Assembly: GCA_002269645.1 (NCBI GenBank)
Contig: NIVC01002102.1
Coordinates: 1-64,000, forward strand
Length of the DNA stretch: 64,000 nt
Source of the DNA: Macrostomum lignano
Taxonomy: Eukaryota
Reading direction: 5' to 3'
The position numbers were made by a program, and so were the translations under genes. How positions within the stretch are numbered: position 1 is the first letter of the stretch; each line of letters starts with the position of its first letter. Of the stretch, positions 1 through 53,594 are shown piece by piece. The notes beneath the pieces were generated by a model. That model saw only the letters and a program-made list of their open reading frames with translations. It was not told the origin of the DNA and did no database searches.

Positions 1-190
1 TGTACGGCGCTGCCAGAAGCGGGGCTTGGAGTCGCTGCCACAGAGACTGTCTTTGTACGGCGCTGCCAGAAGCGGGACTTTGAGTCGCTGCCACCAGAGA
101 CTGTCTTTGTACGGCGCTGCCAGAAGCGGGGCTTGGAGTCGCTGCCACCAGAGACTGTCTTTGTACGGCGCTGTCAGAAGCGGGCTTTGA
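1..190. repeat. 54-bp tandem repeat (~3.5 copies, runs off window edge)
   Basis: Unit TGTACGGCGCTGCCAGAAGCGGGGCTTGGAGTCGCTGCCACCAGAGACTGTCTT is repeated. It may be a subterminal repeat of the adjacent CACTA-type element. Confidence 0.9.
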
Positions 191-2163
191 GTCTGGACTC
201 CGGAAAGCAGCTGGCTTCCTGTGCGATGCGACCGCCCCTTTAATCGGTCACCGCCATGCTTTAGCTGCTGTCTGCAAGTATTTCTTACAGATTGTTCAGA
301 GGGCCTGCCGGCTTCAGCGGTCGCGCCATAGATGAATGTGATTGCTTCTGTTAGGAAAAAAGTTGAAAGTTACTATGAATAGCATGCACTGTGCTCGACT
401 AATTTCTTGATATTTAGCTCTAAAAGTCTCATTGAACGTTGATTAAGTAGACTTACTTTGGAAATGGCTGAGCAGAGTGCTCTGAAATCCAAGCTGCGCA
501 TCAGTAAGGTTGGTCGCAACTCCAGCAGCAACAGCTCGGCTTCGCATGTCTGACCCGATTAAATTAATAACCGCCTGCATCTCTTTCGACAAGCTCTCGT
601 TAAGCATTGCCATTAAAGCATCGGACCACTTGTCTCGCTTGCATGAACGTAGCAGGCTCTTCTGTTTAGATTTTTACAGGTGAGAATACTTATAGATTAT
701 TATTTCAGTGATAGTACTAGTGCGCTTTGAGTAGTAGTTAGAGCATTTCTTCTGAAGAAAAAAAAAAAACTCTGTCATGAACTTACCAAAGTAGAAATAT
801 GTTCATTTGGACTGGAAGCGAATTGCACATATTTTTCCCAGGAGTTGATCGGCCAGAATGAAGGCTCAGAATTATCAGTTGGAATGTCAGCGCCAACAGG
901 TTCCAAAAAGCGTAGCACGCTCTGCACTTCAGTGCGCATTGCGGTGATTTGTTTGGTCAAACTATTTTCTAATGCTTTCAATTCATTCTTGCGCATAGTA
1001 AGTTCGCGTAGGGCATATAAGGACAGAAACTTGATGCCTCTTGGACTTTCCAGCTCAAAGCTAACACCGGCTTGGATCTGCTCTTCTAGTTTTCTAAGAA
1101 AGCCAGAACCAAAATTAAAAGATGAAATGGTGGGAGGCGACTTAGGAATCGTCGATCGATCATCTGCTACGAACTCAGCTTCTATTTCAGCTTCCGCCTC
1201 AGCTTCCACCTCAGCTCCCATCTCAGCTTCCACCTCAGCTTCCGCCTCAGCTTCCGCCTCAGCTCCCATCTCAGCTTCCACCTCAGCTCCGATCTCAGCT
1301 TCCACCTCATCTTCCGCTTCAGCTTCCGCCTCAGCTTCCACTTCAGCTTCCGCCTCAGCTTCCACTTCAGCTTCCGCCTCAGCTTCCGCCTCAGCTTCCA
1401 TATCGGCGTCTACGCCAGCTTCTGCTTCATCATCACTAATAGGAGGCATTGGCGCTAACTGTGCAATCGTAGGCGGATGTTGTTTAGGCAGCAAAGCTGG
1501 AGGTTGCAAACAGCGGCTGCTCTTATCTTCGAAGATTGCCTCGGAATCGGTGGCTGAGCCGTCTGACAGATTCTGTTTGGGATGGTTACGGCATGAGAAA
1601 TTATCAAGTTAATGTCAGTTTTAAAGATTATTTTCACATTTAATTTCTTCCCTTTTCTTAAAAAATAGTTTAAAAGGTAAAACGGAGAAAACAAAGTTCT
1701 CGATAAAAATTATATGGGCTGTGCTTAATTTTACCTTAGTCTGGTAATGCCTTCGTGCTTTCTTCATGTCACGCTCCTGAAAGACTCTGGGTTGAACCAA
1801 CTCGAGAATTCGGTTCAGTCGGGTCTTTTTGGCCACCAATTCACGCACAAAGCGGAAGCTCCCAGGCTCTAGGTTGTTGCTTAGTATTACCTTTAAATTA
1901 ATGAGAAAATATGAGCGTACAAATATTAGATCGATTCAAGAATTTTAACATTTCAATCGTTGGGATCGGTTGCTTACCTGAATAATTAGAGCAGAGTAAA
2001 AACAGCCTTCATACAAGGCTTCACACTTCCACTTCTCAGTGGAGTCCCTCTTTTCTAACCATTCCTCTTCCTTAAGGTTTTGAAAGCCTTCAGGAAGCTT
2101 CACTTCGCTTTCCGAGACCTCAACAATTTGACGGTCGTCTTTAAAGATCACTAAAAACTTCAT
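1..2163 (-). CDS. Spliced accessory gene of the CACTA/EnSpm element, DUF4806-like, with an (EA)n acidic tract; 3' end not resolved
   Basis: Exons 2163-1978, 1890-1735, 1572-787, 661-457 and 347 onward join in frame through canonical GT-AG introns (donors GTAAGC, GTAAAA, GTAAGT, GTAAGT). The N-terminus is [14 protein letters not shown]. The C-terminal motif [10 protein letters not shown] resembles the DUF4806 end motif. The frame stays open into the 54-bp repeat to position 1. A GAAGCT-type coding microsatellite lies at ~1180-1400. The domain call is by motif resemblance only. Confidence 0.6.
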
Positions 2164-2527
2164 TGTAGCATGCAGACTAGACTATGCTAGTGCAAAACTG
2201 AGTACCAAATAAAGCAAGAGTTTGGAGCTCACACTATAGTTTATGCTTATTTAATGATTCAGTGGTTTAGGTTGCTTCTAGAAGCAATTGTCTTCTATAG
2301 TTCTTCGAATGAAAAAGGCCGCCCTGGCTTTTCCAATTTCATTGGCCCTACCGTCCCCGCATCCATACCTGTCCAATCAGCGCGCACAAACCCCCAAAGG
2401 AATAGTTTTCAATTCTTCCCAGCTTTTGTTCATATCCTTTCTTTAATACGAAATAAGCAATCGTAGTAATTACTTTATTATTATTACAACAGTCAACTAT
2501 CATCAAAGTCTGATTCGGACGAAAACA

Positions 2528-4531
2528 ATGACAAGGCAATTGAGGCGACAAGCAAATAAGGATTTGCTGGGCTTGTTCATGGAAGGAGAACAAGAAGCTT
2601 TGGAAGACATCGCACTGCAAGAGAAAAAAAGAAAAGTATTCGAAGCAGATGATTCTGGGAGAGTCGCCGGTTTCATCGCTTCGGAGTCCTCTGTAGCAGA
2701 AGTCAATGAAGGTACGGATCCAGATCTTGACAACGACAATGGCAGCTATCCTGATTTTGACGAGTTCGCGCGAGTTTGCAGCGATGAAGATGAGGAGATT
2801 GACAAGAAAGAGGATGACCGCTCTTTAGAAGATAAAATATTCGCCTTGCTGGTAGTCTACTTTTCTTGTTTCAACCTAAGTCGTGGATCTAAAAAATTCC
2901 TTGTTGATGGTCTAAGAGACATAGGCTTGCCTGCGCCGAAGTCTGTCAACTCTATTGAGGCCGTCATCAATGCTGGCGATCCAACGGAAAAATTGGAGCC
3001 CATGGGAAAAGGCCATTTTCGCTACATTTCGATTCTGAAAAATCTAGAACTAATGTTTCGCAAAAACCAGCTGCACATGAAGCCAGAATATCTACAACAC
3101 GATAGTGAAACTGAGAAGGTTTACAAAATTGAAGCCATCGTTAATTTTGACGGCTTGCCTTTGTACCGAGCAAGCCACTTCGGTCTTTGGCCCATACTTA
3201 TGTCTATTCCCAGCATATTCAGCAGACCTTTTCCAGTAGCCGTATGGGCTGGTTGTGGCAAGCCACCTCTGAATGATTATCTTCGACAATTTTGCGACGA
3301 GGCTAAACGTTTTCTTACGGGTCCAATAAAAATTATCGAAAATTTAAGCATCAGCTTCTCGACTATCCGATTTGTTTGCGATGCGCCTGCTCGAGCCTGG
3401 GTCTCAGTAACTCAAGGGCACATGTCGTACGTCGGTTGCATGTACTGCAGGGCTACTGGACCTTATACCGACAACAGAGTAACATTTTCAACGAGCGTCG
3501 GGGAGTCTCGTAGCAGCCAACAATACCGAGAGGGAAAGGAGTCTAACCAGGAAAATAAAAAAATCGCTCTATCGCCCCTTCTAAATTTGCCTAACATTAG
3601 TTTTGTCGATGCTTTTCCCCCTGACTACCAGCATGCCGTATGCCTTGGAGTCACAAGGAAGCTATTTTACCTATTTTTCGACAAATCTAATGGCAAGAAG
3701 TGTCTCGTCTATCCCGGTCCGATGAGCCTATTGGGCGACCGAATTACTATGGCTGCCGGTTGGACACCTTCAAACTTTCAACGAAGACCCCGGAAAATCG
3801 ACTTGGAACTGAAGCACATGAAGGCTACTGAATTCAGACAGTACTTGCTGTACCTAGGACCTGTCCTCTTCAAAGGCATTTTAAATGAAGAAAGGTATAA
3901 CCACTTTCTTTACCTCCATTTCGCCATTTACGCATACTCCAACGAAAGGTACTCCAAGTGGTGGACGCAGGCAAAAACTTGCATTGAAGTTTTTGTTGAA
4001 CGGGCTGCCCACCTTTACGGCCAGAAGTTTATAAGTTTCAATCTTCACACTATTCTTCATTTGGATGAGTTTGTCCGAAAGCTAGGCAGTTTAAACAACT
4101 TTTCGACTTTCCCTTTCGAAAACTTTCTTGGATCTGTAAAGCGCCGCGTAAAGGTGACAAGGCACATGGCAGCGCATTCAGTTAAGCAGGTGCTCAGAGT
4201 TCGCGATCTTCTGTTGAATGAGCAGCGAATTCCACCGTTGAAATTCAGCACAAAGCGAGGTGATAATTGTTGCATAATCGACAAAGTATGCGTCCTAATC
4301 GAAGCTGTAAGTGAAGCTAATCAAGTCACTGGCAGGATTTTACACCCAGTTGACAACATCTACGCCAACCCATATCCATCTTTGCGTCTGGGAATCGGCT
4401 TGTACAGGATGACATCTGGTGTTCTAACTGGCACACCTGAGCGAAAGTGCTGGATTTTGCCTGCGAATCTGCTTGCCAATCTTGCTGGAGCGGACAGGAT
4501 CCAGCAAGCCATTTTTTTGTCATTCCTCTGA
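2528..4531 (+). CDS. EnSpm/CACTA (CMC superfamily) DDE transposase, intact 667-aa ORF
   Basis: Motifs DGLPL..S..GLWPI, CDAPARA, CxxC (CMYC), DYQHAVCLG, KATEFRQYLLYLG, SFNLHTILHL and FPFENFLG are typical of animal EnSpm-like transposases. Confidence 0.85.
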   Translation: MTRQLRRQANKDLLGLFMEGEQEALEDIALQEKKRKVFEADDSGRVAGFIASESSVAEVNEGTDPDLDNDNGSYPDFDEFARVCSDEDEEIDKKEDDRSLEDKIFALLVVYFSCFNLSRGSKKFLVDGLRDIGLPAPKSVNSIEAVINAGDPTEKLEPMGKGHFRYISILKNLELMFRKNQLHMKPEYLQHDSETEKVYKIEAIVNFDGLPLYRASHFGLWPILMSIPSIFSRPFPVAVWAGCGKPPLNDYLRQFCDEAKRFLTGPIKIIENLSISFSTIRFVCDAPARAWVSVTQGHMSYVGCMYCRATGPYTDNRVTFSTSVGESRSSQQYREGKESNQENKKIALSPLLNLPNISFVDAFPPDYQHAVCLGVTRKLFYLFFDKSNGKKCLVYPGPMSLLGDRITMAAGWTPSNFQRRPRKIDLELKHMKATEFRQYLLYLGPVLFKGILNEERYNHFLYLHFAIYAYSNERYSKWWTQAKTCIEVFVERAAHLYGQKFISFNLHTILHLDEFVRKLGSLNNFSTFPFENFLGSVKRRVKVTRHMAAHSVKQVLRVRDLLLNEQRIPPLKFSTKRGDNCCIIDKVCVLIEAVSEANQVTGRILHPVDNIYANPYPSLRLGIGLYRMTSGVLTGTPERKCWILPANLLANLAGADRIQQAIFLSFL

Positions 4532-5345
4532 CAGGTGACTCCGAGGAGGCCTGATGTAGGACGCGTGAGTCGCAAGTGAGTACTAAAAATATCTTTCTCT
4601 GGTTTTTTATATCAATCCGATTTCCTTCTATCTCGATTCTCGTATTCCCTGTATTCTGCAATTCTGCAATTTCTTCCTGTATATGTTCTCAGCTTCAACA
4701 CGCAGACATGATTGTAGATTGTGAGTTAAATATTAGTATATTACGATGCATACTCGATCGCAACTGCCATTTTATCTTTACTTTTAGGATCCGCAGTTTC
4801 ACGAGTTTACTACAAGCCTGGCGATCGGTCATTCATGAACTGGAGTTATTTTAGAGACTGATTATATTGATTCTATCTTTATTGTTTACATTCTTGAACC
4901 CTAGAATTAGGTACAGCTTAAAATTCGGTGTTATAGAGGCCGGAGGGGTAATTTAGCTCAAAACTGTGTAGGAGGGGTGGAGGGGCCGGAAACTTAGTGG
5001 GAGGTGATGCCGCTGTATGTGGCTGAAATGGGGGATTTATTTTCTTAAACCCCAGTATACGAGTATGAAATACTAATGGTATTGTATACAGTATTCCTAC
5101 CTCCAATTCAAGCCAACAGAATTTTTGTAATATTTTACTTATCCCATTGATAATAATCAACTAGCTGCACAACTGTAATTTCCATCTGTTACCATCTGGT
5201 TTTACTTTTAAGCACATATAAAATGCTATGAATATTTTCTTTCTTTTGCTGGCACCTATTTTAGGTCAGATCGAATCAATACTTTCCGTATCAAAGTATT
5301 TATGTGTTTATGCTAGGTTGTAACTTATAAAATATATATATATGA

Positions 5346-6372
5346 ATGAATGACCGATCGCCAGGCTTGTAGTAAACTCGTGAAACTGCGGATCCTAAAA
5401 GTAAAGATAAAATGGCAGTTGCGATCGAGTATGCATCGTAATATACTAATATTTAACTCACAATCTACAATCATGTCTGCGTGTTGAAGCTGAGAACATA
5501 TACAGGAAGAAATTGCAGAATTGCAGAATACAGGGAATACGAGAATCGAGATAGAAGGAAATCGGATTGATATAAAAAACCAGAGAAAGATATTTTTAGT
5601 ACTCACTTGCGACTCACGCGTCCTACATCAGGCCTCCTCGGAGTCACCTGTCAGAGGAATGACAAAAAATGGCTTGCTGGATCCCTGTCCGCTCCAGCAA
5701 GATTGGCAAGCAGATTCGCAGGCAAAATCCAGCACTTTCGCTCAGGTGTGCCAGTTAGAACACCAGATGTCATCCTCTACAAGCCGATTCCCAGACGCAA
5801 AGATGGATATGGGTTGGCGTAGATGTTGTCAACTGGGTGTAAAATCCTGCCAGTGACTTGATTAGCTTCACTTACAGCTTCGATTAGGACGCATACTTTG
5901 TCGATTATGCAACAATTATCACCTCGCTTTGTGCTGAATTTCAACGGTGGAATTCGCTGCTCATTCAACAGAAGATCGCGAACTCTGAGCACCTGCTTAA
6001 CTGAATGCGCTGCCATGTGCCTTGTCACCTTTACGCGGCGCTTTACAGATCCAAGAAAGTTTTCGAAAGGGAAAGTCGAAAAGTTGTTTAAACTGCCTAG
6101 CTTTCGGACAAACTCATCCAAATGAAGAATAGTGTGAAGATTGAAACTTATAAACTTCTGGCCGTAAAGGTGGGCAGCCCGTTCAACAAAAACTTCAATG
6201 CAAGTTTTTGCCTGCGTCCACCACTTGGAGTACCTTTCGTTGGAGTATGCGTAAATGGCGAAATGGAGGTAAAGAAAGTGGTTATACCTTTCTTCATTTA
6301 AAATGCCTTTGAAGAGGACAGGTCCTAGGTACAGCAAGTACTGTCTGAATTCAGTAGCCTTCATGTGCTTCA
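5346..6372 (-). pseudogene. Inverted near-identical duplicate of 3810-4836 (transposase 3' part plus downstream flank)
   Basis: The reverse complement matches 3810-4836. Differences seen: one TAC->TAG nonsense change at ~5777 and two 1-bp homopolymer indels near 5665-5685. Confidence 0.92.
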
Positions 6373-7270
6373 TGTGCTATATATAGTTCAGACCTTGTCA
6401 AGCCTCGCACGAAATTCGTCTTTGTTCTTCCTTTATCTTTGGTGCAATATGGGAATAGAAAAAACTTGATGACCTGCACTGATAAGGAGTCAGGACAGTT
6501 TGTTTGTTTCGCATAGGTTCGCTTAAGCAGGCAAGAACGGTACAACGTAGAAATTCCCATATCACTTCTCTAGCCTTTCTTCTAACCCCCCCCCACCCAA
6601 CTGAAATGAATTGGCCAAAATTAGCTGTCACCTCTAGGTTAAAATAATTCCTTGCATTGCCCTGTCATTACGGGTTATTGCCACTGGCCAGGAAATTCAA
6701 AACATTTTTCTAAGAGCAACTCAAAATGAGTAAGCTTTATACAGGCTATAATTGATGAGAGATTTCTGTTAATGAGAGATAAAGCCCACACGGGTTTTAT
6801 TGATGTCGGGTTGTAAAAGACGATCGCAAATAGAGAACAATAATATAGCGAGAATATTCAAGCTGGCGGACGTGCGCCGAGCTATAATTTTCTGTTAACT
6901 CGGGGATTCAGTAAGACTAGAATAATTGAGTGGCAAAAACTGTCATGAGAACGCAAAGGCACTTTGAAACCTTTATGATTCAGTGGATTTATTCATCCGG
7001 AAAAATGACAAGGCGGGGGTTAGATTGTTATTTATTCATGACCTGTCCCATTTGAGCTCTGACCGCCTCTGAATATGAAAACTGAGAAAATATCTATGTC
7101 TATGTATCCCTCCTTATCAAAATGTGACTGAGTGACTGTGCCCTACTCGTAATCGGGGAGATAAATGAAGGGGAGACAGGGGAGACAGTCTCCTATCTCC
7201 AATCTCCCATGTCTCTTATTTGCCATTATGCAGTTAACTGGGCCCGTCATGCATAGCCTACTGCAGGCTG

Positions 7271-7320
7271 CAGGGGTCAGCAAACTCCAGCCCACGGGCC
7301 ACATGCGGCCCGCAGTCTCT
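7271..7320 (+). mobile_element. hAT-Charlie-like terminal fragment
   Basis: CAGGGGTCAGCAAACT...CCCACGGGCCACATGCGGCCCG resembles Charlie-family 5' ends. No partner end was found. Confidence 0.45.
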
Positions 7321-7472
7321 CTATCCAGCCCTCGGGTCCTTTCTAACTTCCCATGCCAATAACAATCCAGCCCGCTCAAGGTTTGCATCTCTTCTCAGCT
7401 TTTTTGCTAATTTCTTCTCCTTTTCTCATCAAAATCTCCCCTCTCTCCTCCTTTCCCCTCTTTCCTTGCTCC

Positions 7473-7662
7473 CAGTGGCGCAACCAGGGGGGGGCGGGGG
7501 GGGGGGGGGGGGGCCCCCCCTTAGGCGGAGACCCAGAAAAAATTGAAGGGGGACCAAGCGAATTTTCGCCAAAAACAGAGCCTCCCCTCCGCCCCCTCCC
7601 TCACGGGACTTTACCTTCCAGAATCCGCCCCCCCCCTCAAAAAATTTCTGGTTGCCCTACTG
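7473..7662. mobile_element. hAT-type MITE, 190 bp
   Basis: Imperfect TIRs CAGTGGCGCAACCAG / CTGGTTGCCCTACTG. Exact 8-bp TSD CTTGCTCC at 7465-7472 and 7663-7670. Confidence 0.88.
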
Positions 7663-8546
7663 CTTGCTCCCTTCCTCTGACATCTCTCCTTTCGCCTCTC
7701 TCCTCTCTCCCTTTATCTCCCTTCTTTCTCTCATCTCGCCTCTCTCCTCTCTTCCCTCCTCTCACATCTCACATCTCTCCCCTCTCCCCTCCACTCTCCT
7801 CCTTCTGGCCCGCAGTCTTGAGCTAGATTCTCTATCTGGCACTTAAAGTAAAATAGTTAGCCAATCCCTCGCAAGGAATTTCGATCATTACAATGAGCAA
7901 AAGTTGACATTAACAAAATTTTGGCGGGCGCGTTGTGCCAAGCCTGAACAGCTTCTCTAGACAGCACTCTGTGCTCTCCAGAATTACTTGAACTGTTAGC
8001 AGTGGCGCAAGCAGAATTTCTTATGTGGGGGGGGGGCGGATTCTGAAGGGTAAAGACCCAAGGGGGGCGGAGGGGTGGCTCTGTATTTTGGCAAAAATGC
8101 GCTTGGTCCCCCTTTAATACAGCTTGGCAAACCTGATTGATTTTCCGGGATTTCCCCTGTCCTAGTTGTATTTCTCTAAAATTCTGGAAGATAAATCGAG
8201 ATTCTAGATAATAGCTGCATCTAAGATTAGTTTGTTTTGCTATCGCATTGTACCGTACAATTAATTATTGAAAATTTTAAACCTTTGCTGGCATACGCAT
8301 ATGTTATCTTTGACCTTACCTGTTGTTTAATAGGTAAATTATTACTGTATGGAGGTACATGTAGATATAGGCATTTTGACTGTCAACTGTCCACCCCATA
8401 CAAGCATACGGCTTTCAAATAATTATGCAACCTTGTGCAAGGGTATGCCGCCTACTTACATGTAAAACTTTGAAATGAGTATTTATTTACGCCACTATCC
8501 AAGGGGGGGGGGGCGCGGCCGCGGGAGACCGACAGCGGAGACCGCC

Positions 8547-8944
8547 ACAATTTGCCCGCCAGACAATTTGCCCGCCAGACAATTTGCCCGCCAGACAATT
8601 TGCCCGCCAGACAATTTGCCCGCCAGACAATTTGCCCGCCAGACAATTTGCCCGCCAGACAATTTGCCCGCCAGACAATTTGCCCGCCAGACAATTTGCC
8701 CGCCAGACAATTTGCCCGCCAGACAATTTGCCCGCCAGACAATTTGCCCGCCAGACAATTTGCCCGCCAGACAATTTGCCCGCCAGACAATTTGCCCGCC
8801 AGACAATTTGCCCGCCAGACAATTTGCCCGCCAGACAATTTGCCCGCCAGACAATTTGCCCGCCAGACAATTTGCCCGCCAGACAATTTGCCCGCCAGAC
8901 AATTTGCCCGCCAGACAATTTGCCCGCCAGACAATTTGCCCGCC
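8547..8944. repeat. 16-bp minisatellite (ACAATTTGCCCGCCAG) x~25
   Basis: Essentially perfect tandem array, flanked by a 15-bp inverted repeat at 8540-8554 / 8975-8989. Confidence 0.97.
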
Positions 8945-9786
8945 GCCCTATTTCACCTTGAATAGAACGGCGATCAAATTGTGGCGGTCAAATGTACTCG
9001 TAGATGTAGTAGACCCGGCGGCCGCCCCCTTTGCCATGGCTGGACTTGCATATAAGGGGGGTAAATTTTGAGCTTACTTTGGCTTTTTAGACCAAAACAA
9101 AAATTTGGGCAAATCTGCCCCCACTACTTTAAAAATCCTGAATTGACCACCAAATCGGACTCATCTAAATGAAAACTTAAGAATACAAGCAACATTGTAC
9201 ATGCGCTAGTGCTTAAGTAGTGGAGTATTAAAAAATATATTTTTTGTTGCGTTGATTTCGAAGATCAAAAGGTATTACTTATAAGTAGGTAGGCTAAAAC
9301 GCACACTTTTGCATTCACATCCAATTTCTGAAGTGTATGAAACTCAGAAAAATTTGCACGAGTCGCCTATACCCCACTTTGGAGCTTGCAGCAATTTTTC
9401 AAAGAGATGGCTGCTCAAAGGGTTAAAAGTTCAAGTTAGCTGTAGTATGAGGATTGGTCAATGCAAATAAATAATGAGCTCATTATACAAGAAAATAATT
9501 AATAAGGATATCAATAGTTCGCCCCACTGTCCACTGCACGTACTGAAAGGCGTACTGTCAGGTTCGAGCACAAAAACACCCGAAACTAAAAAAATCAACT
9601 TTAAAAATTCTGCTCTTTACATAATTTCCTCACAAAAATATTTCATACGTACAAAGAAGAAAACCTACAAACTTTTATCTTGCGGGATGGGGCGTACCCT
9701 TGAGGGCCGCCGGGGCGCCGGCCTAGAGGGTACGCCCCAATTTTTCTAACCACTGGGTTGAACAATTTCTAAAACGGGTCGCTTAC

Positions 9787-12100
9787 GGGTCACGCAGAGT
9801 TGCTTCAAGAAAGTGCGTCCGATTGCTCCACGCGATAATGGTCGAGGCTCCGGTTGGTCCTGACGTTTTATTATAGATTATTTTATGATTAAATAGTATA
9901 GATTTCTTACCGAGGAGGCTAGACAGTACAAGCACAAATTTTAATTTACCTATCAGTTTCACCGTGAGCAGTTTGGAAAATTCGCTGGTAGCCTCATCAA
10001 CACCGACCTTGCTGGCGGACTGGGGCAGTGCACTCACTGCCTCTAGAAGGATGCTTATCGGCTGCGGCGAAGCTAAAAATTTCCACCTGCAGTTCCTGGG
10101 AGCGGGAGCCTCATCAGGCAGATGGAGCAGTATGGAGTCGGGTTGGTTGATCCAATGGTCGGCCTGGACTAGCTGAGGCGAGCTCGAGCAGCGCAAGGAA
10201 TGCACGGACACCTGCGCTGCGGAGCTGGAGGCGGGGGTTGGGCTGAGTTGGAGACCGATAATTCAGACAGACCGACACTTCAGATAGACCGACACTTCAG
10301 ATAGACCGACACTTCAGAGAGACCGACACTTCAGAGAGACCGACACTTCAGAGAGACCGACACTTCAGATAGACCGACACTTCAGACAGACCGACACTTC
10401 AAAGAGACCGACACTTCAGAGAGACCGACACTTTGAGAGACCGACACTTCAGACAGACCGACACTTCAGACAGACCGACACTTCAGACAGACCGACACTT
10501 CAGACAGACCGACACTTCAGACAGACCGACACTTCAGACAGACCGACACTTCAGACAGACCGACACTTCAGATAGACCGACACTTCAGATAGACCGACAC
10601 TTCAGAGAGACCGACACTTCAGACAGACCGACACTTCAGATAGACCGATACTTCAGACGACAGACCGACACTTCAGATAGACCGACACTTCAGAGAGACA
10701 GACACTTTAGAGAGACCGACACTTCAAAGAGACCGACACTTCAAAGAGACCGACACTTCAAAGAGACCGAAACTTTAGATAGACCGACACTTCAAAGAGA
10801 CCGACACTTCAGAGAGACCGACACTTCAGATAGACTGACACTTAGACCGACACTTCAGACACCGACACTTCAGACAGACCGACACTTCAGAGAGACCGAC
10901 ACTTCAGAGAGACCGACACTTCAGAGAGACCGGCACTTCAGAGAGACCGACACTTTGAGAGACCGACACTTCAGAGATACCGACACTTCAGAGAGACCGA
11001 CACTTCAGAGAGACCGACACTTTAGAGAGACCGACACTTCAAAGAGACCGACATATCTGACAGACCGACATTTCAGAAAGACCGATACTTCAAAGAGACC
11101 GAAACTTTAGATAGACCGACACTTCAGATAGACCGACACTTCAGATAGACCGACACTTCAGATAGACCGACACTTCAGAGAGACCGACACTTTAGAGAGA
11201 CCGACACTTCAAAGAGACCGACATATCAGACAGACCGACATTTCAGAAAGACCGATACTTCAAAGAGACCGAAACTTTAGATAGACCGACACTTCAGATA
11301 GACCGACACTTCAGAGAGACCGACACTTCAGACAGACCGACACTTCAGATAGACCGACACTTCAGAGAGACCGACACTTCAGACAGACCGACATCTTAAA
11401 ACGACTGATAATTTAAAGGCTGTAAATTTTACAGAGCCTATTGTCGCAGCTCCTTATCACTCCTGTTAGTTATAAAAGATCGAAAAATGAGTACCAATGC
11501 AAGGACGAATTGAGTGTAAAGACTGAACACCCATTCATTCGGGAACTTCTGCAGGCCCCCTTGCGATAAGTTATACGACATACTCGTAATACATACTCGT
11601 AAAAGCAGCGGGCTGTGTGCACCCTGGCGCACTTCAAGCGACATTGTCACACAACCGGCGAGAGGCATTGCTGCCCATTCCGCCGACTCCTGCACTTGGA
11701 ATCGAGCCTGGGCCGCTAATACATAAGACCACCTTTCCGTTACACAAACAAAAGAGCAAGAAGCAGTCAAGCAAGCAAAATAGGCAAAAGTCACATTTTA
11801 GTAAAGAAAAAAGAGAAGCTAATTTTGATTTGTTGCAGTCATGGATTTGGAAATATTCAATAAAACTCGTATGAAAATAAATAAATAAGCAATTATGGCT
11901 CTTTCACGCAGCAAAATATGTAATTTGTTGATAAAAGGCTTGCGAAAATCCCCTATTAAATATTGGTGACCCTTACTTAATTGGCTCTTGGGCCAATGCC
12001 TATCTGAGACAGATTACTGACGCAGTAAACTCAAATGGATTTACCTTTTATACTCGCCAACCAGCAGCACAGAGCACAGGAGCAGCTTCAGCTTGAGCAT
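9787..12100 (-). CDS. Secreted/membrane protein with CUB-like domain (paralogue 2); 3' exons not located
   Basis: Exon 12100-12045 encodes a signal-peptide-like MLKLKLLLCSVLLVG. Exon 10224-9950 contains NCRWKF. Exon 9859-9787 ends at donor GTAAGC. Intron phases are 2,1,2 and all joins are in frame. Confidence 0.55.
10251..11393. repeat. 16-bp minisatellite (AGACCGACACTTCAGA variants) x~70, intronic
   Basis: Tandem array inside intron 1 of the 9787-12100 gene, ending ~27 nt from the acceptor. Confidence 0.97.
11611..11735 (-). mobile_element. tRNA-derived SINE family B, internally deleted copy
   Basis: Shares GGCTGTGTGCACCCTGGCGCACTT...GGCATT.CTGCCCATTCCGCCGACTCC and CTTGG.ATCGAGCCTGGGCCGCT with 43281-43598. 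Confidence 0.65.
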
Positions 12101-12399: not shown

Positions 12400-15300
12400 T
12401 CAGAGCCTTGGGCATTTGCAATGCTTTTTCAAACAAAGCACGACTAGGACAGCAAGCAGCGCCAGGATCACCAGGGAGAACAGCAAGGCGGTGAGACGCT
12501 CAACCGGCCGTTCCTGTCCCCGCCGAAGACAGTCGCAGCAGCGACTTGCCAGGAGCTCCAACTGGCACTGCTTGGCCGTGGCCGCGGCGCCGCTGTCGGC
12601 GCAGATCCCGAGGCTGCCGGTGGCGGGCTCAGAAGGGAATCCGAGCAGAGTCGGTTGAGCATCTCCAGAACAGGCGGTGGTGTTCAACGGCTTGGACAAG
12701 TTGAAGGACTGAATGGCGAGACAGTGGCCGGAACCGCTGATGATCAGCCTGTGCAGTGTCAGTGGAAGTCGGTGGTTCCATTCACATTCTGAAATCTCCA
12801 ACTCTACCGATGAGAGTGCGTTGCCTAGTCGTCAAAAAGTGTGACCCTGAAACGGCCCATTGCGCTGATTCTTGAGCCCACGCACTCACAAGAATGCGTA
12901 AGCAGGCACACGCTCACACAGCATGTACACTCTCTGGGCCTGGTGGGTTGGCCCTCATGAAGTAAAACGTTTTCATCGGGTCTAATCTCTATACTGTATT
13001 TCCATCGTGTCGAAGGTTAATTTGATACGCTAGGTCACGTGACAGCTAACAAGCGGAAATTCCGCGGCGCCAACCACCCCATGATGTGTACTGACTCGGG
13101 CACCCACCCCAGCCACAAGCCCCCTCTCCCAGAGGTTCATTATTGAGCGATAGCTCAGCCAGCTCCAAAGCCCCCAGACCTGTCAGCTGGCAAGGTGGCA
13201 GCCCCGCATGCGCAGCCGCCGTTGGCAAGCCGGCGCCAGTACACCAGCTGGTGCTCGCCCGCCTCGGTGGTGCAGTCGCAGCGGGCCATGCCGAGTCGGA
13301 GCGGCCCCTCCGTCAGTTTGGCCTCGTCTGGCTCCAGGCCGCCTGACTGCTTGAGCTCGAAATCTGCTTGCGGAAAGCCAAGAAGCCATTTTACATGAGA
13401 CTACATGCTCAAAGTTAAGTTTCAAGCTCACTCCATGATCTCTGAGCAGGCTCACTCCATGATCTCACAGCAAGCTCACTCTATGATCACACAGCAGGCT
13501 CACTCCACGATCTCACAGCAAGCTCACTCCATGATCTCACAGCAAGCTCACTCTATGATCACACAGCAGGCTCACTCCACGATCTCACAGCAAGCTCACT
13601 CCATGATCTCACAGAAAGCTCACTCCATGATCTCACAGCAAGCTCACTCCATGATCTCACAGCAAGCTCACTCCATGATCTCACAGCAGGCTCACTCCAT
13701 GATCTCTGAGCAAGCTCACTCCATGATCTCTGAGCAAGCTCACTCCATGATCTCACAGCAAGCTCACTCCATGATCTCACAGCAGGCTCACTCCATGATC
13801 TCTGAGCAAGCTCACTCCATGATCTCTGAGCAAGCTCACTCCATGATCTCACAGCAAGCTCACTCCATGATCTCACAGCAAGCTCACTCCATGATCTCTG
13901 AGCAGGCTCACTCCATGATCTCACAGCAAGCTCACTCCATGATCTCACAGCAAGCTCACTCCATGATCTCACAGCAAGCTCACTCCATGATCTCACAGCA
14001 AGCTCACTCCATGATCTCACAGCAAGCTCACTCCATGATCTCACAGCAAGCTCACTCCATGATCTCTGAGCAAGCTCACTCCATGATCTCTGAGCAAGCT
14101 CACTCCATGATCTCTGAGCAAGCTCACTCCATGATCTCACAGCAAGCTCACTCCATGATCTCACAGCAAGCTCACTCCATGATCTCACAGAAAGCTCACT
14201 CCATGATCTCACAGCAAGCTCACTCCATGATCTCACAGCAAGCTCACTCCATGATCTCACAGCAGGCTCACTCCATGATCTCTGAGCAAGCTCACTCCAT
14301 GATCTCACAGCAAGCTCACTCTATGATCTCACAGCAGGCTCACTCCACGATCTCACAGCAAGCTCACTCCATGATCTCACAGAAAGCTCACTCCATGATC
14401 TCACAGCAAGCTCACTCCACGATCTCACAGCAAGCTCACTCCATGATCTCACAGCAAGCTCACTCCATGATCTCACAGCAAGCTCACTCCATGATCTCAC
14501 AGCAAGCTCACTCCATGATCTCTGAGCAGGCTCACTCCATGATCTCACAGCAAGCTCACTCCATGATCTCACAGCAAGCTCACTCCATGATCTCACAGCA
14601 AGCTCACTCCATGATCTCACAGCAAGCTCACTCCATGATCTCACAGCAAGCTCACTCCATGATCTCACAGCAAGCTCACTCCATGATCTCTGAGCAAGCT
14701 CACTCCATGATCTCTGAGCAAGCTCACTCCATGATCTCACAGCAAGCTCACTCCATGATCTCACAGCAAGCTCACTCCATGATCTCACAGAAAGCTCACT
14801 CCATGATCTCACAGCAAGCTCACTCCATGATCTCACAGCAAGCTCACTCCATGTTCTCACAGCAAGCTCACTCCATGATCTCTGAGCAAGCTCACTCCAT
14901 GATCTCACAGAAAGCTCACTCCATGATCTCACAGCAGGCTCACTCCACGATCTCACAGCAGGCTCACTCCACGATCTCACAGCAGGCTCACTCCACGATC
15001 TCACAGCAGGCTCACTCCACGATCTCACAGCAGGCTCACTCCACGATCTCACAGCAGGCTCACTCCACGATCTCACAGCAGGCTATCACATATCCTACTC
15101 TATTAAACAGAGCCTGCACTCACACGAGGCCAAGAATTGCTCTGCCTGGCTCCATCGCGTAAAAGCCGCGGCTCGAGCGACGCGACTGGTGACTCGCACA
15201 GCCAGGCAGCGGTCATCCAGCAGGACGAGGCCGCGGCTGCAGAAGCCTGCCTTCGCGTGCGAGATGCGCAGAAAGAATCGGTGGGCGAGGCTGCCGAGGG

Positions 15301-18477: not shown

Positions 18478-18659
18478 GCGGGTCGCGTACACACGTACAC
18501 CCTCAATTACCCCAGCTAATGCTGGCACCCATTTTACAGCTGTGTGAACTGAAGCAATGCAGAGTTAAGTGTCTTGTTCAAGGGCACAGATTTTTGCGAC
18601 TGGGTTGAGAATCGAACCCCCGATCTTTCAGTCGTGAGTCCGACGATCTAGACTACACC
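18478..18659 (-). mobile_element. tRNA-derived CORE-type SINE (family A)
   Basis: The minus strand has A-box and B-box-like head (GGTTCGATTC), then GTGCCCTTGAACAAGACACTTAACTC...CAGCTGTAAAATGGG, which resembles the MIR/CORE domain. Confidence 0.75.
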
Positions 18660-19143
18660 CCCCAATGGCACAACGCCCTAGGTGACATTGTCCAACAACC
18701 AGCGCTGAGGCAATTCTGTCCAAAATTTTCATGCACAAAAATTCAAATGAGACACACTGAAAAAATAGCTGTAACTGCTAGCAGAGCTAGCTTTTCAAGC
18801 ACTACGCGAAACACACAAACACCAATAATTAAAGCATGGACTGAACAGCAGTAGCAATTTAAGCGATTTATTAATATTTTTTGCAAAAATGACACTAAAA
18901 AAACAATTTCATTTTTTAAGCTTATTACAAACGCTTTTAGAGAGAAAAGTTAAACATGTAATTAATCTCCAAAATCAAAGGCACTAGATGAGTCTTTGTT
19001 TCTCTAGAATATCTAGATATCTAGACTGGGCCGATATGTAGCGTAAATCACTTTTCTTAGCATAGAAATCTAAAGGTGGAGCAGAACAGAATGGAATAAT
19101 CATTGGAATAGAACTGACAAACAGATGCAATACTTTTTTAATT

Positions 19144-22568
<3,425 letters not shown>

Positions 22569-23448: not shown

Positions 23449-26400
23449 CTAGCTGAGGCCGGCGGCAGAACGGAGCGCCTCGCCCGTACCGTCCAGCTCA
23501 GGCCAGGTGCTCACCATGCTGCCCGAACTGCTGGAGTACTTCTTGCGGATGGCGGTGTACCTGCGGATGGAGGGGCGGAGATTGAGAACAACGGCTTCAC
23601 TGAATGACTAGGGAGAGGTCAGCTGACCCCCATCGCACACTGAAGGATTCGGGAAGGGTCAGCTGACCCCCATCTCACACTGAATGACTAGGGAGAGGTC
23701 AGCTGACCCCCATCGCACACTGAATGACTAGGGAGAGTCAGCTGACCCCATCGCACACTGAATGATTAGGGAGGTCAGCTGACCCCCATCGCAAACTGAA
23801 TGACTAGGGAGGTCAGCTGACCCCCATCGCACACTGAATGACTAGGGAGAGTCAGCTGACCCCCATCACACAAATGATTAGGGAGGGGTCAGCTGACCCC
23901 CATCGCACACTGAATGACTACGGAGAGGTCAGCTGACCCCCATCGCACACAAAATGATTAGGGAGGGGTCAGCTGACCCCCATCGCACACTGAATGACTA
24001 GGGAGAGTCAGCTGACCCCCATCACACAAATGATTAGGGAGGGGTCAGCTGACCCCCATCGCACACTGAATGACTACGGAGAGGTCAGCTGACCCCCATC
24101 GCACACAGAATGACTAGGGAGAGGTCAGCTGACCCCCATCACACACTGAATGGTTAGGGAGGGGGTCAGCTGACTACAAGGGCGGCACCAAACTCAGAGC
24201 TCACTTGGCATTGTCCCCGGCCCGCACAGCCAGGCCAGCAATCTGCCTGACCAGAGGCTCCAGCTGCTGCCTGCTGTAGCCCGAGAACACTTCAAGCGCG
24301 TCTGTCCAGCCGGAGCCGCCGCAGGCGCCCTCCCGGCTAGGCAGCAGTTCGCGGGCCAGACAGAATGCGCCGGCGGCCAATCCGGAAGGTGGCAGGTGAG
24401 CGGCCGAGTAGTCAGCCCTAGCCAACTCGGCCAGGTACTTGGCGGCCTCGTGTACGGCTGGAGTGGCCGCGGCCACCTTGCTGTATCGGCGCAGGAAGTG
24501 AATGGGCAGCGGATAGCCCAGGAAGAAGTTCAGTTGCTTCAGCAGGCGCTGCTCGGTGGCCCGGATCTCGGCGGCTGAGTGATTAGAGTGAGAAGGGGGG
24601 CATTGTAGAGCTGACGGCGACGCTTGTACAAGGAGTGTGCTTCTAGTACAGGATACTAGCACTAGACTATTGCACATGTACAGAAAAGGGTTGGGTCTAG
24701 TACAGGACAAACTGCCTCTTGTACTTTTACAGAATACTGGATTTCTTGTACAAAAGAGTGGTTTTAGTACAGGAAGGTGACTTGTACAGGAAACAAGGGT
24801 TGTTCCAGTACAGAATGACTTCTACAGGAAACAAGGGTTGTTCTCGTACAGAATGACTTGTACAGGAAGCAGGGGTTCCAGTACAGAATGATGACTTGTA
24901 CAGGAAGCAGGGGTTCCAGTACAGAATGATGACTTGTACAGGAAGCAGGGGTTCCAGTACAGAATGATGACTTGTACAGGAAGCAGGGGTCCCAGTACAG
25001 AATGATGACTTGTACAGGAAGCAGGAATTCCAGTACAAAATGATGACTTGTACAAGAAGGGCTTGTTCCAGCACAGAATGACAACTTGTACAGGAAGCAG
25101 GGGTTCTAGAGCAGGTTTCTAGTAAAAGGCCCGAAAGATTTTAGAGACAAAGGCAGGCTTTTTTTCGCCGCGTAGAAAAAATTAGTCAGCAAAAATATCA
25201 TATAGTCTACTTACAGTAGGCAAACTATGCTTGACAAGAGAAACTGTTTCCAGCCGTTAATATTTCATCATTTTGATTCGGTAAATATTGATATATAGCA
25301 TGCACGGTCCACAGTGCAGGCACAAATACTCGCATCTCAGGCTAGGAAATGCCAGAGCAGAGTGGCGCAGTGGAAGCGTGCTGGGCCCATAACCCAGAGG
25401 TCCGTGGATCGAAACCACGCTCTGCTAAAAATTCTATTTTTTATTTAAATCTTCTCGCGATTTTTTCCAGTCATTGAGGAAGTTAATAAAAAGCAATTAC
25501 CAGTAAAAGCCTGATCAGTGATGTACACAAAGTCGGCAACGTTAGGCGGGTAGATCTCTTCGTACTTGCTGGCCAGAAGCATAGCAGACACGCCGATTAG
25601 CTGGAATTCGCTTTTCTTCACGCTGGCCCCAGCATCCGAGGACATGAAGGCGTCAATGATGTGATAGGTGAGGTACAGGCTCTCCGGCAGCAGGGTGTAG
25701 CGCTGGTGGACCTGAAAATGCGGAGCGGCATGGCCGGCTATAACTAGGAGTGGAATAGAGGGGACAGCAGAGTGGAATAGAGGGGACAGCAGAGTGGAAT
25801 AGAGTGGACAGCAGAGTGGAATAGAGTGGACAGCAGAGTGGAATAGAGTGGACAGCAGAGTGGAATAGAGGGGACAGCAGAGTGGAATAGAGGGGACAGC
25901 AGAGTGGAATAGAGTGGACAGCAGAGTGGAATAGAGGGGACAGCAGAGTGGAATAGAGTGGACAGCAGAGTGGAATAGAGTGGACAGCAGAGTGGAATAG
26001 AGTGGACAGCAGAGTGGAATAGAGGGGACAGCAGAGTGGAATAGAGGGGACAGCAGAGTGGAATAGAGTGGACAGCAGAGTGGAATAGAGGGGACAGCAG
26101 AGTGGAATAGAGTGGACAGCAGAGTGGAATAGAGTGGACAGCAGAGTGGAATAGAGGGGACAGCAGAGTGGAATAGAGTGGACAGCAGAGTGGAATACAG
26201 TGGACAGCAGAGTGGAATACAGTGGACAGCAGAGTGGAATACAGTGGACAGCAGACGGACACACAGCAGAGAGGAATACACTGGACAGCAGACACACAGC
26301 AGAGTGGAATACAGTGGACAGCAGAGTAGAGCACACAATGACAGCAGCAAAGCCGCACCTGCACCAGCCAGTCGCACAGGATGGTCCGCATCCTAGGCGT

Positions 26401-41500: not shown

Positions 41501-42172
41501 AAGCAAGTTTTGGACTTGTGAAAAAAGATTCACCCTACCAAGCGTCAAAAATTGCTCCATTTTTTTCTGTGGTACAGGCTGTCCCCTCAGACTCACCACG
41601 ATACTCATGTCGTCATTCACCTTCAGAGAGCACATCAGTGTTGGAACGTCTTCAACAACAATGAAACAGAATGTAATGGATCTGAATGAATCTGGTTGCT
41701 TTCAAGCTGGGTTTTTATGTCCGCCAGCGATTCAATTTGGTCAGATGACATAAAATCAAATGCTTCATTCTCTAAACGATTAGACTCTGATTCGTGTCTC
41801 TTTTCTGCGGTAGTTGAGTCCCCTCTTGATTGAGAAGCTACTGGCTGAAGCCGCGCCGGAAGTTGGGGAAAAATTGAAGGAATTGCGTCTTTTTTAAGCC
41901 TTCTTTTGTTCAATAGCTGCTGATCTCTTTTGCGCTTGCGACGAGAGTTGGTGTCCAAAGAGTTGCAAACAAAATCCGACTCTGTGAAGTGCAAGGAGCA
42001 CAACCGGGATTCTTGTTGGAGTGTAATTCTCCCGCCGAATGCGTCGAATCCATTCCTGCAGCAGTTGAGCATCGTGCAGTGGAAATTCGTGGAAAGACAC
42101 TTTTCAAATTGAAGTAGCTGGTGCATGGGTATCTTTCCTGGCATATCCAGAATTGCAGTCGAAAGCGGCGCA
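38600..42172 (-). pseudogene. THAP-domain P-element transposase pseudogene
   Basis: THAP pieces CAAFDCNSGY, SFHEFP..D..LLQEWIRRIRR, LCSLHF, AIPSIF. Core LIIDEI, LCFMV, DNHAAN, FDPTHTIKN, QSDPLEGRFG. It has an in-frame stop, at least 3 frameshifts, no start codon, and an insertion at 40141-40927. Confidence 0.88.
40141..40927. mobile_element. Non-autonomous DNA element, 787 bp, nested in the P transposase
   Basis: 17-bp TIRs GGCTCATTCCATATAAG / CTTATATGGAATGAGCC and 4-bp TSD ATCT. Removing it restores ...LTAD|ILHEHYLSV... in frame. Confidence 0.9.

Positions 42173-53111: not shown

Positions 53112-53594
<483 letters not shown>

What the first reader, a model, noticed from the sequence alone, without database searches (positions are those of the whole stretch)
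3810..6372. Mu-killer-like locus: 1027-bp inverted duplication of the transposase 3' end can fold read-through RNA into a ~1 kb hairpin
Seen: 3810-4836 and 5346-6372 are near-identical inverted arms around a 509-bp spacer. The arm contains the last ~240 codons of the transposase and its 3' flank; the copy has a nonsense change and lacks the N-terminus. Transposase read-through on +, or minus-strand read-through from the co-oriented gene cluster to the right, would give a perfectly paired ~1 kb stem. Known: maize Mu killer is an inverted partial duplication of MuDR whose hairpin transcript triggers heritable siRNA silencing of the family in trans. Inference: this could be a self-generated, family-wide silencer for an animal CACTA element, directly attached to an intact copy.
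Basis: partly seen in the sequence, partly recalled or inferred. Interest (0 to 1): 0.8.

Follow-up and report, generated by a model that had tools for sequence, protein, structure and literature searches.

The report
Inverted copy of transposase gene tail
A flatworm (Macrostomum lignano) transposase gene is followed 509 bp downstream by a reversed, almost identical 1 kb copy of its own tail, so read-through RNA could fold into a long hairpin, but nothing available here shows that it is transcribed or silences anything.

Summary
Bases 3810-4836 and 5346-6372 are inverted copies that differ at 3 of 1027 positions, around a unique 509-bp spacer. The arm holds codons 428-667 of an intact 667-codon ORF plus 305 bp of 3' flank. 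The copy carries TAC>TAG at codon 626.

The window is the first 64 kb of contig NIVC01002102.1 of the Macrostomum lignano assembly Mlig_3_7. That assembly was built from PacBio reads with Canu and polished only with Pilon. The repeat therefore lies 3.8-6.4 kb from a contig end, and two of the three arm differences are homopolymer indels.

The ORF is a distant relative of CACTA (Transposase_21/DUF4218) transposases. No terminal inverted repeats, target-site duplication or second copy could be found.

The copy is flanked on both sides by (TA)n, with 4-bp and 9-bp junctional duplications. This fits a templated repair or replication insertion, not transposition.

The hairpin potential is real: MFE about -2144 kcal/mol, and no AATAAA/ATTAAA on the + strand for 4.7 kb past the stop codon. 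The minus-strand route is disfavoured.

Transcription, siRNAs and trans targets cannot be tested here. The locus differs from Mu killer because it duplicates the 3' end, includes no terminus or promoter, and is linked in cis. I read it as a plausible but unproven hairpin locus of a known kind. Moderate-to-low interest.

The parts
2528..4531 (+). Single-exon, uninterrupted 667-codon ORF of a CACTA-related (Transposase_21/DUF4218-like) transposase. It is full length relative to 15 homologs.
   Evidence: ORF list. Homologs down to 7.6e-128, with Macrostomum lignano best at 39% identity. Alignment A1 has invariant D208, D285 (CDAPARA), C304, C307, H369, K432, A433, E435 and R437. 9 of 16 homologs hit PF13960 and 2 of 16 hit PF02992; the ORF itself hits none.
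3810..4836 (+). Arm 1, the original: codons 428-667 (722 bp) plus 305 bp of 3' flank.
4837..5345 (.). Unique, non-palindromic 509-bp spacer (35% GC), which would be the loop of the predicted hairpin. It has no + strand AATAAA/ATTAAA, only weak variants (TATAAA at 5217 and 5326, AATATA at 5331). It has two minus-strand AATAAA (5041, 4883).
   Evidence: No SMRTbell adapter word of 10 nt or more.
5346..6372 (-). Arm 2, the inverted copy. It has 3 differences from arm 1. On the + strand it reads antisense to the transposase.
5777..6373 (-). Truncated 198-codon ORF in arm 2, equal to transposase residues 430-625. Its ATG is created at the outer junction, and it ends at the derived TAG (5777-5779) that replaces conserved Y626.
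5331..5345 (.). Left flank of arm 2: an (AT)n tract running into the junction 'aatatatatatatga|ATGAATGACC'. ATGA occurs three times here against twice in the donor.
6373..6386 (.). Right flank of arm 2: 'TTCA|tgtgctatatatag'. The 9-bp unit TTCATGTGC is tandemly duplicated across the junction and is followed by (TA)n.
4496..4512 (+). Two compensating homopolymer indels 16 nt apart (GG/GGG and T7/T6). They recode 5 codons in arm 2 (RIQQAI > RDPASH) but keep the same stop codon.
2164..2527 (.). 364-bp interval between the transposase ATG and the ATG (2163, minus strand) of a divergent multi-copy host gene. This is the only room for a 5' terminus or promoter, and no TIR was found in it.

Best explanation
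This is a real and very young local rearrangement in the Macrostomum lignano DV1 genome. A 1,027-bp copy of the 3' end of an ORF-intact but terminus-less CACTA-related transposase gene was pasted in reverse orientation into a (TA)n tract 509 bp downstream.

The most likely origin is replication template switching or synthesis-dependent (microhomology/theta-type) end joining at a break in the TA repeat. Transposase-mediated integration is less likely.

It is probably a neutral by-product, not an evolved device. The gene has no canonical poly(A) signal for 4.7 kb past its stop codon. Any transcript of the transposase gene that is not cut at a weak signal would therefore run through the antisense arm and fold into a roughly 1-kb perfect hairpin with a 509-nt loop. 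In an animal with Dicer and AGO that responds to long dsRNA, that hairpin would be diced. It would mainly destroy the very mRNA that carries it (cis self-limitation).

Shown: the structure, the junction anatomy, ORF integrity, the missing poly(A) hexamers, and the fold energy. Inferred: the mechanism of origin, transcription, dicing, and any silencing.
For: Arms are 99.7% identical and the spacer and flanks are unique. Arm 2 is bracketed by (TA)n on both sides, with 4-bp (ATGA) and 9-bp (TTCATGTGC) junctional duplications and no TSD or TIR. The flanks outside the two arms are not complementary and the spacer is not palindromic, so two separate novel junctions are needed. A missed-adapter or fold-back read does not produce that, and no adapter word was found. 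The 2.56-kb structure is shorter than typical PacBio reads, and coverage was 130x (PMC5730564). The ORF is full length with invariant family residues. There is no AATAAA/ATTAAA on + from 3554 to 9227, against about 10 expected from the stop codon to 9227. MFE is -2144 kcal/mol with 1025 of 1027 arm pairs. Dicer and AGO are present, and RNAi by soaking in dsRNA works in M. lignano (PMC4604429).
Against: No read-level or independent-assembly support could be obtained. The locus is 3.8-6.4 kb from a contig end in an assembly that later work describes as containing errors and many chimeric scaffolds. Two of the three arm differences are homopolymer indels of the kind left by PacBio consensus where Pilon cannot place short reads. 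They are therefore not proof of two independent genomic copies. Weak poly(A) variants (TATAAA at 5217 and 5326, AATATA at 5331) lie just before arm 2 and could end transcripts. There is no expression evidence: the ORF is not in any M. lignano protein set in the database. TE control in M. lignano is documented for piRNAs, not endo-siRNAs.
Confidence: 0.5

Rival explanations
1. This is a Mu-killer-like trans silencer. The hairpin transcript is made and diced, and its siRNAs heritably silence all copies of the family.
For: The same structural preconditions as the best explanation. There are precedents in maize: Mu killer (PMC3440606) and Ac/Ds composite insertions whose inverted duplications give dsRNA and siRNAs (bioRxiv 10.1101/2020.01.07.897926). 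There are also precedents in Drosophila, where hpRNAs are born from their targets (PMC10317233, PMC10292708).
Against: No other copy of the family is detectable. The best protein match anywhere is 52% identity over 56% of the length, and there is no DNA match in the window or in five relatives' loci. The arm holds no promoter or terminus, so transcriptional, heritable silencing of the Mu killer type has no obvious target. None of five homolog loci carries such a duplication, so it is not a recurrent feature. Function is untested.
Confidence: 0.12
2. This is an assembly artefact. The inverted arm comes from chimeric long read(s) near the contig end, and the genome has only one copy of the 1027 bp.
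For: The window is bases 1-64000 of NIVC01002102.1, so the repeat is 3.8-6.4 kb from the contig start, which itself lies in a tandem repeat. The assembly used PacBio CLR reads with Canu 1.4 and was polished only with Pilon. Two of the three arm differences are homopolymer indels. The assembly is known to contain errors and chimeric scaffolds.
Against: A missed-adapter or fold-back read gives arms that abut and flanks that are also complementary. Here there is a 509-bp non-palindromic unique spacer, no adapter sequence, and non-complementary outer flanks, so two template switches within one molecule would be required. Arm 2 interrupts what reads as one (TA)n tract, as a genomic insertion would. 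A C>G substitution is not a typical PacBio consensus error.
Confidence: 0.2
3. The origin is transposition-linked. Base 4836 is the true 3' terminus of the element, and arm 2 is a 'fractured' terminal fragment placed 509 bp away. This happened either by alternative (sister-chromatid or reversed-end) transposition with re-replication, as for maize Ac composite insertions, or by a second 5'-truncated insertion.
For: Both copies end at exactly the same base (4836 and 5346). A shared boundary is what an element terminus would give. The outer end lies inside the ORF with a messy junction, as in fractured Ac.
Against: No inverted match to the putative terminus exists anywhere upstream: score 16, against a shuffle mean of 18. 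The end has neither the CACTA motif of plant elements nor the CCC motif of animal TRC elements (PMC1636069), there is no clean TSD, and there is no second element end nearby to take part in alternative transposition.
Confidence: 0.1
4. Arm 2 acts through protein. The 198-residue N-terminally truncated ORF (residues 430-625, without D208 and D285) is expressed from the minus strand and poisons the transposase, as truncated transposase derivatives do in other systems. That comparison rests on my own knowledge.
For: The junction creates an in-frame ATG directly downstream of TATATATAG. Minus-strand AATAAA at 5041 and 4883 would end such a transcript.
Against: The TATA-like run is only 6 nt from the ATG. 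The ORF carries a premature stop that removes the conserved C-terminus. There is no evidence of a promoter or of expression.
Confidence: 0.03

Closest known systems
Maize Mu killer (Muk)
   Same: It is a partial inverted duplication of a DNA-transposon transposase gene with arms of about 1-1.3 kb. It is proposed to give a long hairpin RNA by read-through transcription (PMC3440606).
   Different: Muk duplicates TIRA plus the 5' 1.298 kb of mudrA. It is a rearranged derivative without an intact gene, is unlinked to its targets, and causes heritable silencing through the plant's own silencing machinery. Here the 3' end plus flank is duplicated, there is no terminus or promoter in the arm, the copy is attached in cis to the intact ORF, no other family copies are visible, and the host is an animal in which piRNAs are the documented TE defence.
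Maize Ac/Ds composite insertions from alternative transposition (Wang et al., bioRxiv 10.1101/2020.01.07.897926)
   Same: Self-generated inverted duplications of fractured transposon fragments lie next to the element. They are transcribed from the element or a flanking promoter into dsRNA, giving 21-22-nt siRNAs from transcribed regions.
   Different: Those arise from the termini of two nearby elements and carry element ends. Here no termini are identifiable, and the junctions look like repair or replication slippage inside a (TA)n tract.
Drosophila hairpin-RNA (hpRNA) loci, e.g. Nmy/Tmy-type suppressors
   Same: They are animal loci made of inverted duplications derived from their own selfish target genes, and they yield endo-siRNAs (PMC10317233, PMC10292708). 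In mechanism this is the closest animal analogue.
   Different: hpRNAs are dispersed, separately transcribed loci with demonstrated Dicer-2/AGO2-dependent siRNAs and genetic function. Here the repeat is in the 3' region of the target gene itself and nothing is demonstrated.
Animal CACTA-related TRC elements (SmTRC1 of Schistosoma mansoni)
   Same: It is a flatworm element with a single large ORF distantly related to Transposase_21. The authors note that in many animals the TIRs cannot be found and the genes may be domesticated or immobile (PMC1636069).
   Different: SmTRC1 has perfect 54-bp TIRs starting CCC, a 2-bp TSD and 30-300 copies. None of these was found for the window gene.

Membership tests
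Mu killer-type silencer locus | Inverted duplication of part of the transposase gene of an autonomous element | tested here: met
   The arms 3810-4836 and 5346-6372 are 99.7% identical and cover codons 428-667 of an intact ORF.
Mu killer-type silencer locus | The arms include the element's terminal inverted repeat or promoter and the 5' part of the gene (TIRA + 1.298 kb of mudrA) | tested here: not met
   The arm is the 3' end plus 305 bp of 3' flank. No TIR was detected.
Mu killer-type silencer locus | One transcript spans both arms, giving hairpin RNA | not testable with these tools
   There is only indirect evidence. The + strand has no AATAAA/ATTAAA from 3554 to 9227. The minus strand has such signals before and between the arms.
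Mu killer-type silencer locus | siRNAs from the arms, and heritable silencing in trans of other copies | not testable with these tools
   No small-RNA data are available here. In addition, no other copy was found.
CACTA / En-Spm (CMC) superfamily, including animal TRC | Transposase with a Transposase_21 (tnp2) domain, usually followed by DUF4218 | tested here: inconclusive
   The window ORF hits no Pfam family at E<=0.1. Among its homologs, 2 of 16 hit PF02992 and 9 of 16 hit PF13960, with best E 2.6e-6. The DG, CDAPARA and C..C motifs are invariant.
CACTA / En-Spm (CMC) superfamily, including animal TRC | Terminal inverted repeats beginning CACTA (plants) or CCC (animal TRC) | tested here: not met
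   The best inverted matches between 2164-2527 and 4532-5345 or 6373-7400, and for a terminus at 4836, are at or below the shuffle mean. Related M. lignano loci L002-L004 show no flanking TIRs either.
CACTA / En-Spm (CMC) superfamily, including animal TRC | 2-3-bp target-site duplication and multiple genomic copies | tested here: inconclusive
   There are no identifiable termini to check for a TSD. There is no second copy in the window or in the protein collection. The rest of the genome could not be searched.
Animal hpRNA / endo-siRNA hairpin locus | Long, near-perfect inverted repeat derived from its target gene | tested here: met
Animal hpRNA / endo-siRNA hairpin locus | Dicer/AGO-dependent small RNAs of about 21-22 nt from both arms, and target repression | not testable with these tools
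   M. lignano has Dicer and AGO and responds to dsRNA. No data exist for this locus.
Long-read palindromic artefact (missed adapter or fold-back chimera) | The arms abut at the centre (with or without adapter), and complementarity extends through the flanks | tested here: not met
   The spacer is 509 bp, unique and non-palindromic, with no adapter word of 10 nt or more. The flanks outside 3810 and 6372 are unrelated.

The most novel reading that the evidence does not exclude
This would be a naturally arisen, cis-linked 'self-killer': a DNA-transposon gene in a flatworm that acquired an inverted copy of its own 3' end. Its read-through mRNA then becomes a Dicer substrate, producing endo-siRNAs that shut down the gene and any diverged relatives. 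It would be the first animal counterpart of maize Mu killer or the Ac composite insertions, caught at about 0.1% arm divergence.
Probability: 0.1. Interest if true: 0.6.

Novelty: new member of a known kind. Interest (0 to 1): 0.3.

Why it matters
How a host first recognises a DNA transposon is an open question. Inverted self-duplications are the best-documented trigger in plants (Mu killer, Ac composite insertions), and hpRNAs play that role for selfish genes in Drosophila. A freshly formed example in a flatworm with working RNAi, transgenesis and public small-RNA and PacBio data would allow a direct test of whether the same route operates in animals. As it stands, this is one locus in a draft assembly, close to a contig end, with no visible trans targets. 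Its value is as a cheap, well-defined hypothesis to check against existing data, not as a discovery.

Tried and rejected
(1) Independent confirmation of the junctions. I made exact look-ups of window ORFs, including the junction-spanning ORFs 4576-4854(+) and 5521-5856(+), in the 15-billion-protein collection. None is on record. In one search the minus-strand coordinates were mis-set by one codon, so those seven look-ups are void. would in any case have shown any protein 90% or more identical to the arm.

(2) Fetching the paralogous loci. The genome is about 85% triplicated, so I tried to reach the other copies through the neighbour gene. Its six near-identical M. lignano homologs exist only as UniRef entries without contigs.

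(3) TIR and TSD search. I used seeds of 9 nt and local alignment against shuffles and found nothing above background. A CACTA pentamer at 2232 and a TAGTG near 4996 have no extended match and no matching flanks when read directly, and I rejected them as chance.

(4) SMRTbell adapter in the spacer: none.

(5) A recurrent 3' inverted duplication in relatives: absent in L002-L006. The ends of the Hydra locus L005 could not be defined because of dense satellite-like arrays.

(6) Rfam found nothing in or near the locus. The PDB profile search gave no relative.

(7) The neighbour gene as part of the element. I rejected this: it is a multi-copy host-like gene whose paralogs differ in tandem-repeat number.
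Full report
**1. The observation**

The inverted repeat is there, at exactly the stated coordinates. The repeat finder gives arms 3810-4498/5684-6372 and 4513-4836/5346-5669, with 509 nt between the inner ends. A gapped alignment and blastn join them into one 1027-bp pair at 99.7% identity.

The only differences are these:
- C>G at 4405.
- An extra G at 4496 (GG versus GGG).
- One T fewer at 4512 (T7 versus T6).

Neither the arms, the spacer (4837-5345), the 5' part of the gene, nor the right flank has any other match in the 64-kb window. Folded as RNA, 3810-6372 pairs 1025 of 1027 arm positions. The MFE is -2144 kcal/mol on the + strand and -2126 on the - strand.

**2. Where the window comes from**

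A ubiquitin-conjugating enzyme ORF in the window (53148-53591) is an exact NCBI protein that clusters with Macrostomum lignano proteins. Its encoding contig is NIVC01002102.1 of GCA_002269645.1 (Mlig_3_7), and the coordinates show that the window is bases 1-64000 of that 204,360-bp contig. The gene to the left of the transposase is 96-100% identical to M. lignano UniRef proteins.

Mlig_3_7 was assembled from PacBio reads (about 130x) with Canu 1.4 and polished only with Pilon, using Illumina and RNA-seq reads (PMC5730564). Later work found about 85% of the genome present in three copies and 36% of the assembly length in chimeric scaffolds (PMC10733133).

The repeat therefore lies 3.8-6.4 kb from a contig end, and that end lies inside a 54-bp tandem repeat.

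**3. The gene**

ORF 2528-4531 (+) is an uninterrupted 667-codon frame. It hits no Pfam model itself. It has 146 homologs with E down to 7.6e-128 in flatworms, Hydra, ticks, spiders, insects, molluscs and fish. Some of these carry PF13960 (DUF4218) or PF02992 (Transposase_21, the CACTA tnp2 family). Of 16 aligned members, 9 hit DUF4218 and 2 hit Transposase_21, all weakly.

The alignment shows the ORF is full length at both ends. It keeps the invariant residues of the family: D208 in NFDGLP, D285 in CDAPARA, C304/C307, H369-VCLGV, and K432-A433-x-E435-x-R437. That these include the catalytic acidic residues is my inference.

The arm begins at codon 428. The copy therefore lacks D208 and D285, and it carries TAG in place of the conserved Y626.

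The gene is thus a distant CACTA-type (animal 'TRC'-like) transposase gene with an intact reading frame. That is not the same as an intact element:
- Only 364 bp separate its ATG from the ATG of a divergent, multi-copy host-like gene.
- Sensitive inverted alignments between that interval and everything downstream score at or below shuffled controls.
- There is no CACTA- or CCC-type terminus as described for plant elements and for Schistosoma SmTRC1 (PMC1636069).
- No protein more than 52% identical exists in a collection that includes the M. lignano proteomes.
- The closest relative I could fetch, L003, is 46-61% identical at the protein level, is frameshifted, and has no DNA similarity.

'Family-wide' silencing therefore has no visible targets at present.

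**4. Anatomy of the duplication**

On the + strand, arm 2 is bracketed by TA repeats:
...cttataaaatatatatatatga|ATGAATGACC...CCTTCATGTGCTTCA|tgtgctatatatagttcag....

At the inner junction ATGA occurs three times, against twice in the donor. At the outer junction the 9-mer TTCATGTGC is tandemly duplicated across the breakpoint. Removing arm 2 and these few bases restores a continuous (TA)n tract.

There is no TSD and no terminus. The flanks outside the two arms are unrelated. I read this as a templated insertion at a break or stalled fork in a TA repeat. The nascent strand copied the + strand of 4836>3810 and then returned, leaving slippage duplications at both joints. This is an inference from junction anatomy and from what is generally known of template-switch and polymerase-theta-type repair. 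It was not tested here.

The alternative is that 4836 is a true element end and arm 2 a 'fractured' end placed by alternative transposition, as in maize Ac. This would explain why both copies stop at the same base, but it lacks any supporting terminus.

**5. Real or artefact?**

For an artefact:
- The locus is close to a contig end.
- The assembly was polished only with Pilon.
- Two of the three differences are homopolymer indels, the residual error type expected where short reads multi-map.
- The assembly has a known error load.

Against an artefact:
- A missed-adapter or fold-back read gives abutting arms and complementary flanks. Here a unique, non-palindromic 509-bp spacer without adapter sequence separates the arms, and the outer flanks differ, so two switches in one molecule would be needed.
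- The insertion neatly interrupts one TA tract.
- The whole structure (2.56 kb) is shorter than typical reads at 130x coverage.

I put 'real' at roughly 0.75-0.8. I could not obtain read-level or independent-assembly evidence.

The two indels lie only 16 nt apart and compensate each other in frame. That is odd under either view and remains unexplained.

**6. Would a hairpin RNA be made?**

+ strand:
- There is no AATAAA or ATTAAA between 3554 and 9227. This is the largest such gap in the window. There are 138 sites in 64 kb, so about 10 are expected between the stop codon and 9227.
- Only weak variants precede arm 2: ACTAAA at 4582, TATAAA at 5217 and 5326, and AATATA at 5331.
- If the gene is transcribed, read-through into the antisense arm is plausible.

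Minus strand:
- AATAAA hexamers at 7036, 6993 and 6801 precede arm 2 for a transcript coming from the right. Two more (5041, 4883) lie in the spacer.
- The nearest recognisable minus-strand genes are a histone deacetylase at 19.6 kb and a cyclin at 24-26.5 kb. Tandem arrays lie in between.

M. lignano has Dicer, Drosha and AGO proteins, and soaking in long dsRNA knocks genes down. The documented TE defence, however, is piRNA-based (PMC4604429).

If the hairpin forms, it sits in the same molecule as the transposase coding sequence. The first-order effect would be cis destruction of that mRNA, and trans effects would need other copies. None of five homologous loci (L002-L006) carries a comparable duplication, so this is a one-off event and not a design feature of the family.

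**7. Comparison with known systems**

In mechanism, the nearest analogues are the maize Ac composite insertions and Mu killer, and in animals the Drosophila hpRNAs born from their targets.

The locus is not a Mu killer equivalent in anatomy. Mu killer is TIRA plus the 5' 1.298 kb of mudrA on both halves, and it is separate from the intact element. Here the 3' end is duplicated, without terminus or promoter, and in cis.

Membership in the CACTA superfamily is supported only by a remote protein relationship. The TIR criterion was tested and not met.

**8. Verdict**

The locus is a new, unproven example of a known kind of structure.

It is worth a quick check against existing PacBio, small-RNA and poly(A)-site data. 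Interest is 0.3. The most novel reading, an animal 'self-killer' hairpin caught soon after birth, has a probability of about 0.1 and would merit about 0.6 if true.

Noticed in passing
window 3554-9227 (+ strand): This is the largest interval in the window without AATAAA/ATTAAA on the + strand (5673 bp; 138 sites in 64 kb). The transposase gene therefore has no canonical poly(A) signal for 4.7 kb past its stop codon, even if arm 2 is discounted.
   Followed up: partly
window 4496-4512 vs 5670-5686: The two indel differences between the arms are only 16 nt apart, both lie in homopolymers, and they compensate each other in frame. This is unexpected both for independent sequencing errors and for independent mutations.
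   Followed up: partly
window 1-202 and 775-2163 (minus strand): The contig starts inside a 54-bp tandem repeat. In UniRef paralogs (P0126-P0131) this repeat is read as the 3' coding end of the neighbouring gene, and its copy number differs between paralogs. The gene also contains an EA-rich 12-bp repeat array (1174-1400).
   Followed up: partly
window 38974-42144 (minus strand): Four consecutive ORFs form a P-element/THAP9-like transposase (THAP, TNP-like RNase H N-terminal and TNP-like GTP-binding domains). It is split by frame changes or introns.
   Followed up: partly
window 60096-60422 and 60886-61231: A second long but imperfect inverted repeat, in two arm segments of 126 nt (92%) and 99 nt (91%) around a spacer of about 460 bp. 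It is a foldback- or MITE-like structure of about 1.1 kb.
   Followed up: no
window 7542-7636 and 8028-8118: A MITE-like inverted repeat (78-91% complementary) containing long poly-G/poly-C runs. It lies 1.2 kb to the right of arm 2.
   Followed up: no
window 21297-21368 and 25356-25427 (+): Two tRNA genes with identical Rfam scores. The second lies among the cyclin exon ORFs, on the opposite strand.
   Followed up: no
window 8547-8944, 10251-11393, about 30620-33000: Three large tandem arrays: 16 bp x 25 (100% identical), 17 bp x 68, and 23 bp x about 100. They fit the very high simple-repeat content reported for M. lignano.
   Followed up: no
L003 8013-9864 (NIVC01000586.1): The closest relative of the window transposase that I could fetch (46% and 61% identity in two blocks) has a frame break near 9218-9232 and is annotated as a 414-residue protein. 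It is probably a decayed copy of a sister family.
   Followed up: partly
L005 (Hydra vulgaris CP147925.1) 750-990, 6750-8450, 14000-14650, 18590-18750: The Hydra homolog is surrounded by dense arrays of a repeat of about 150-250 bp in both orientations. These may be CACTA-style subterminal repeats, but the element ends could not be defined.
   Followed up: partly
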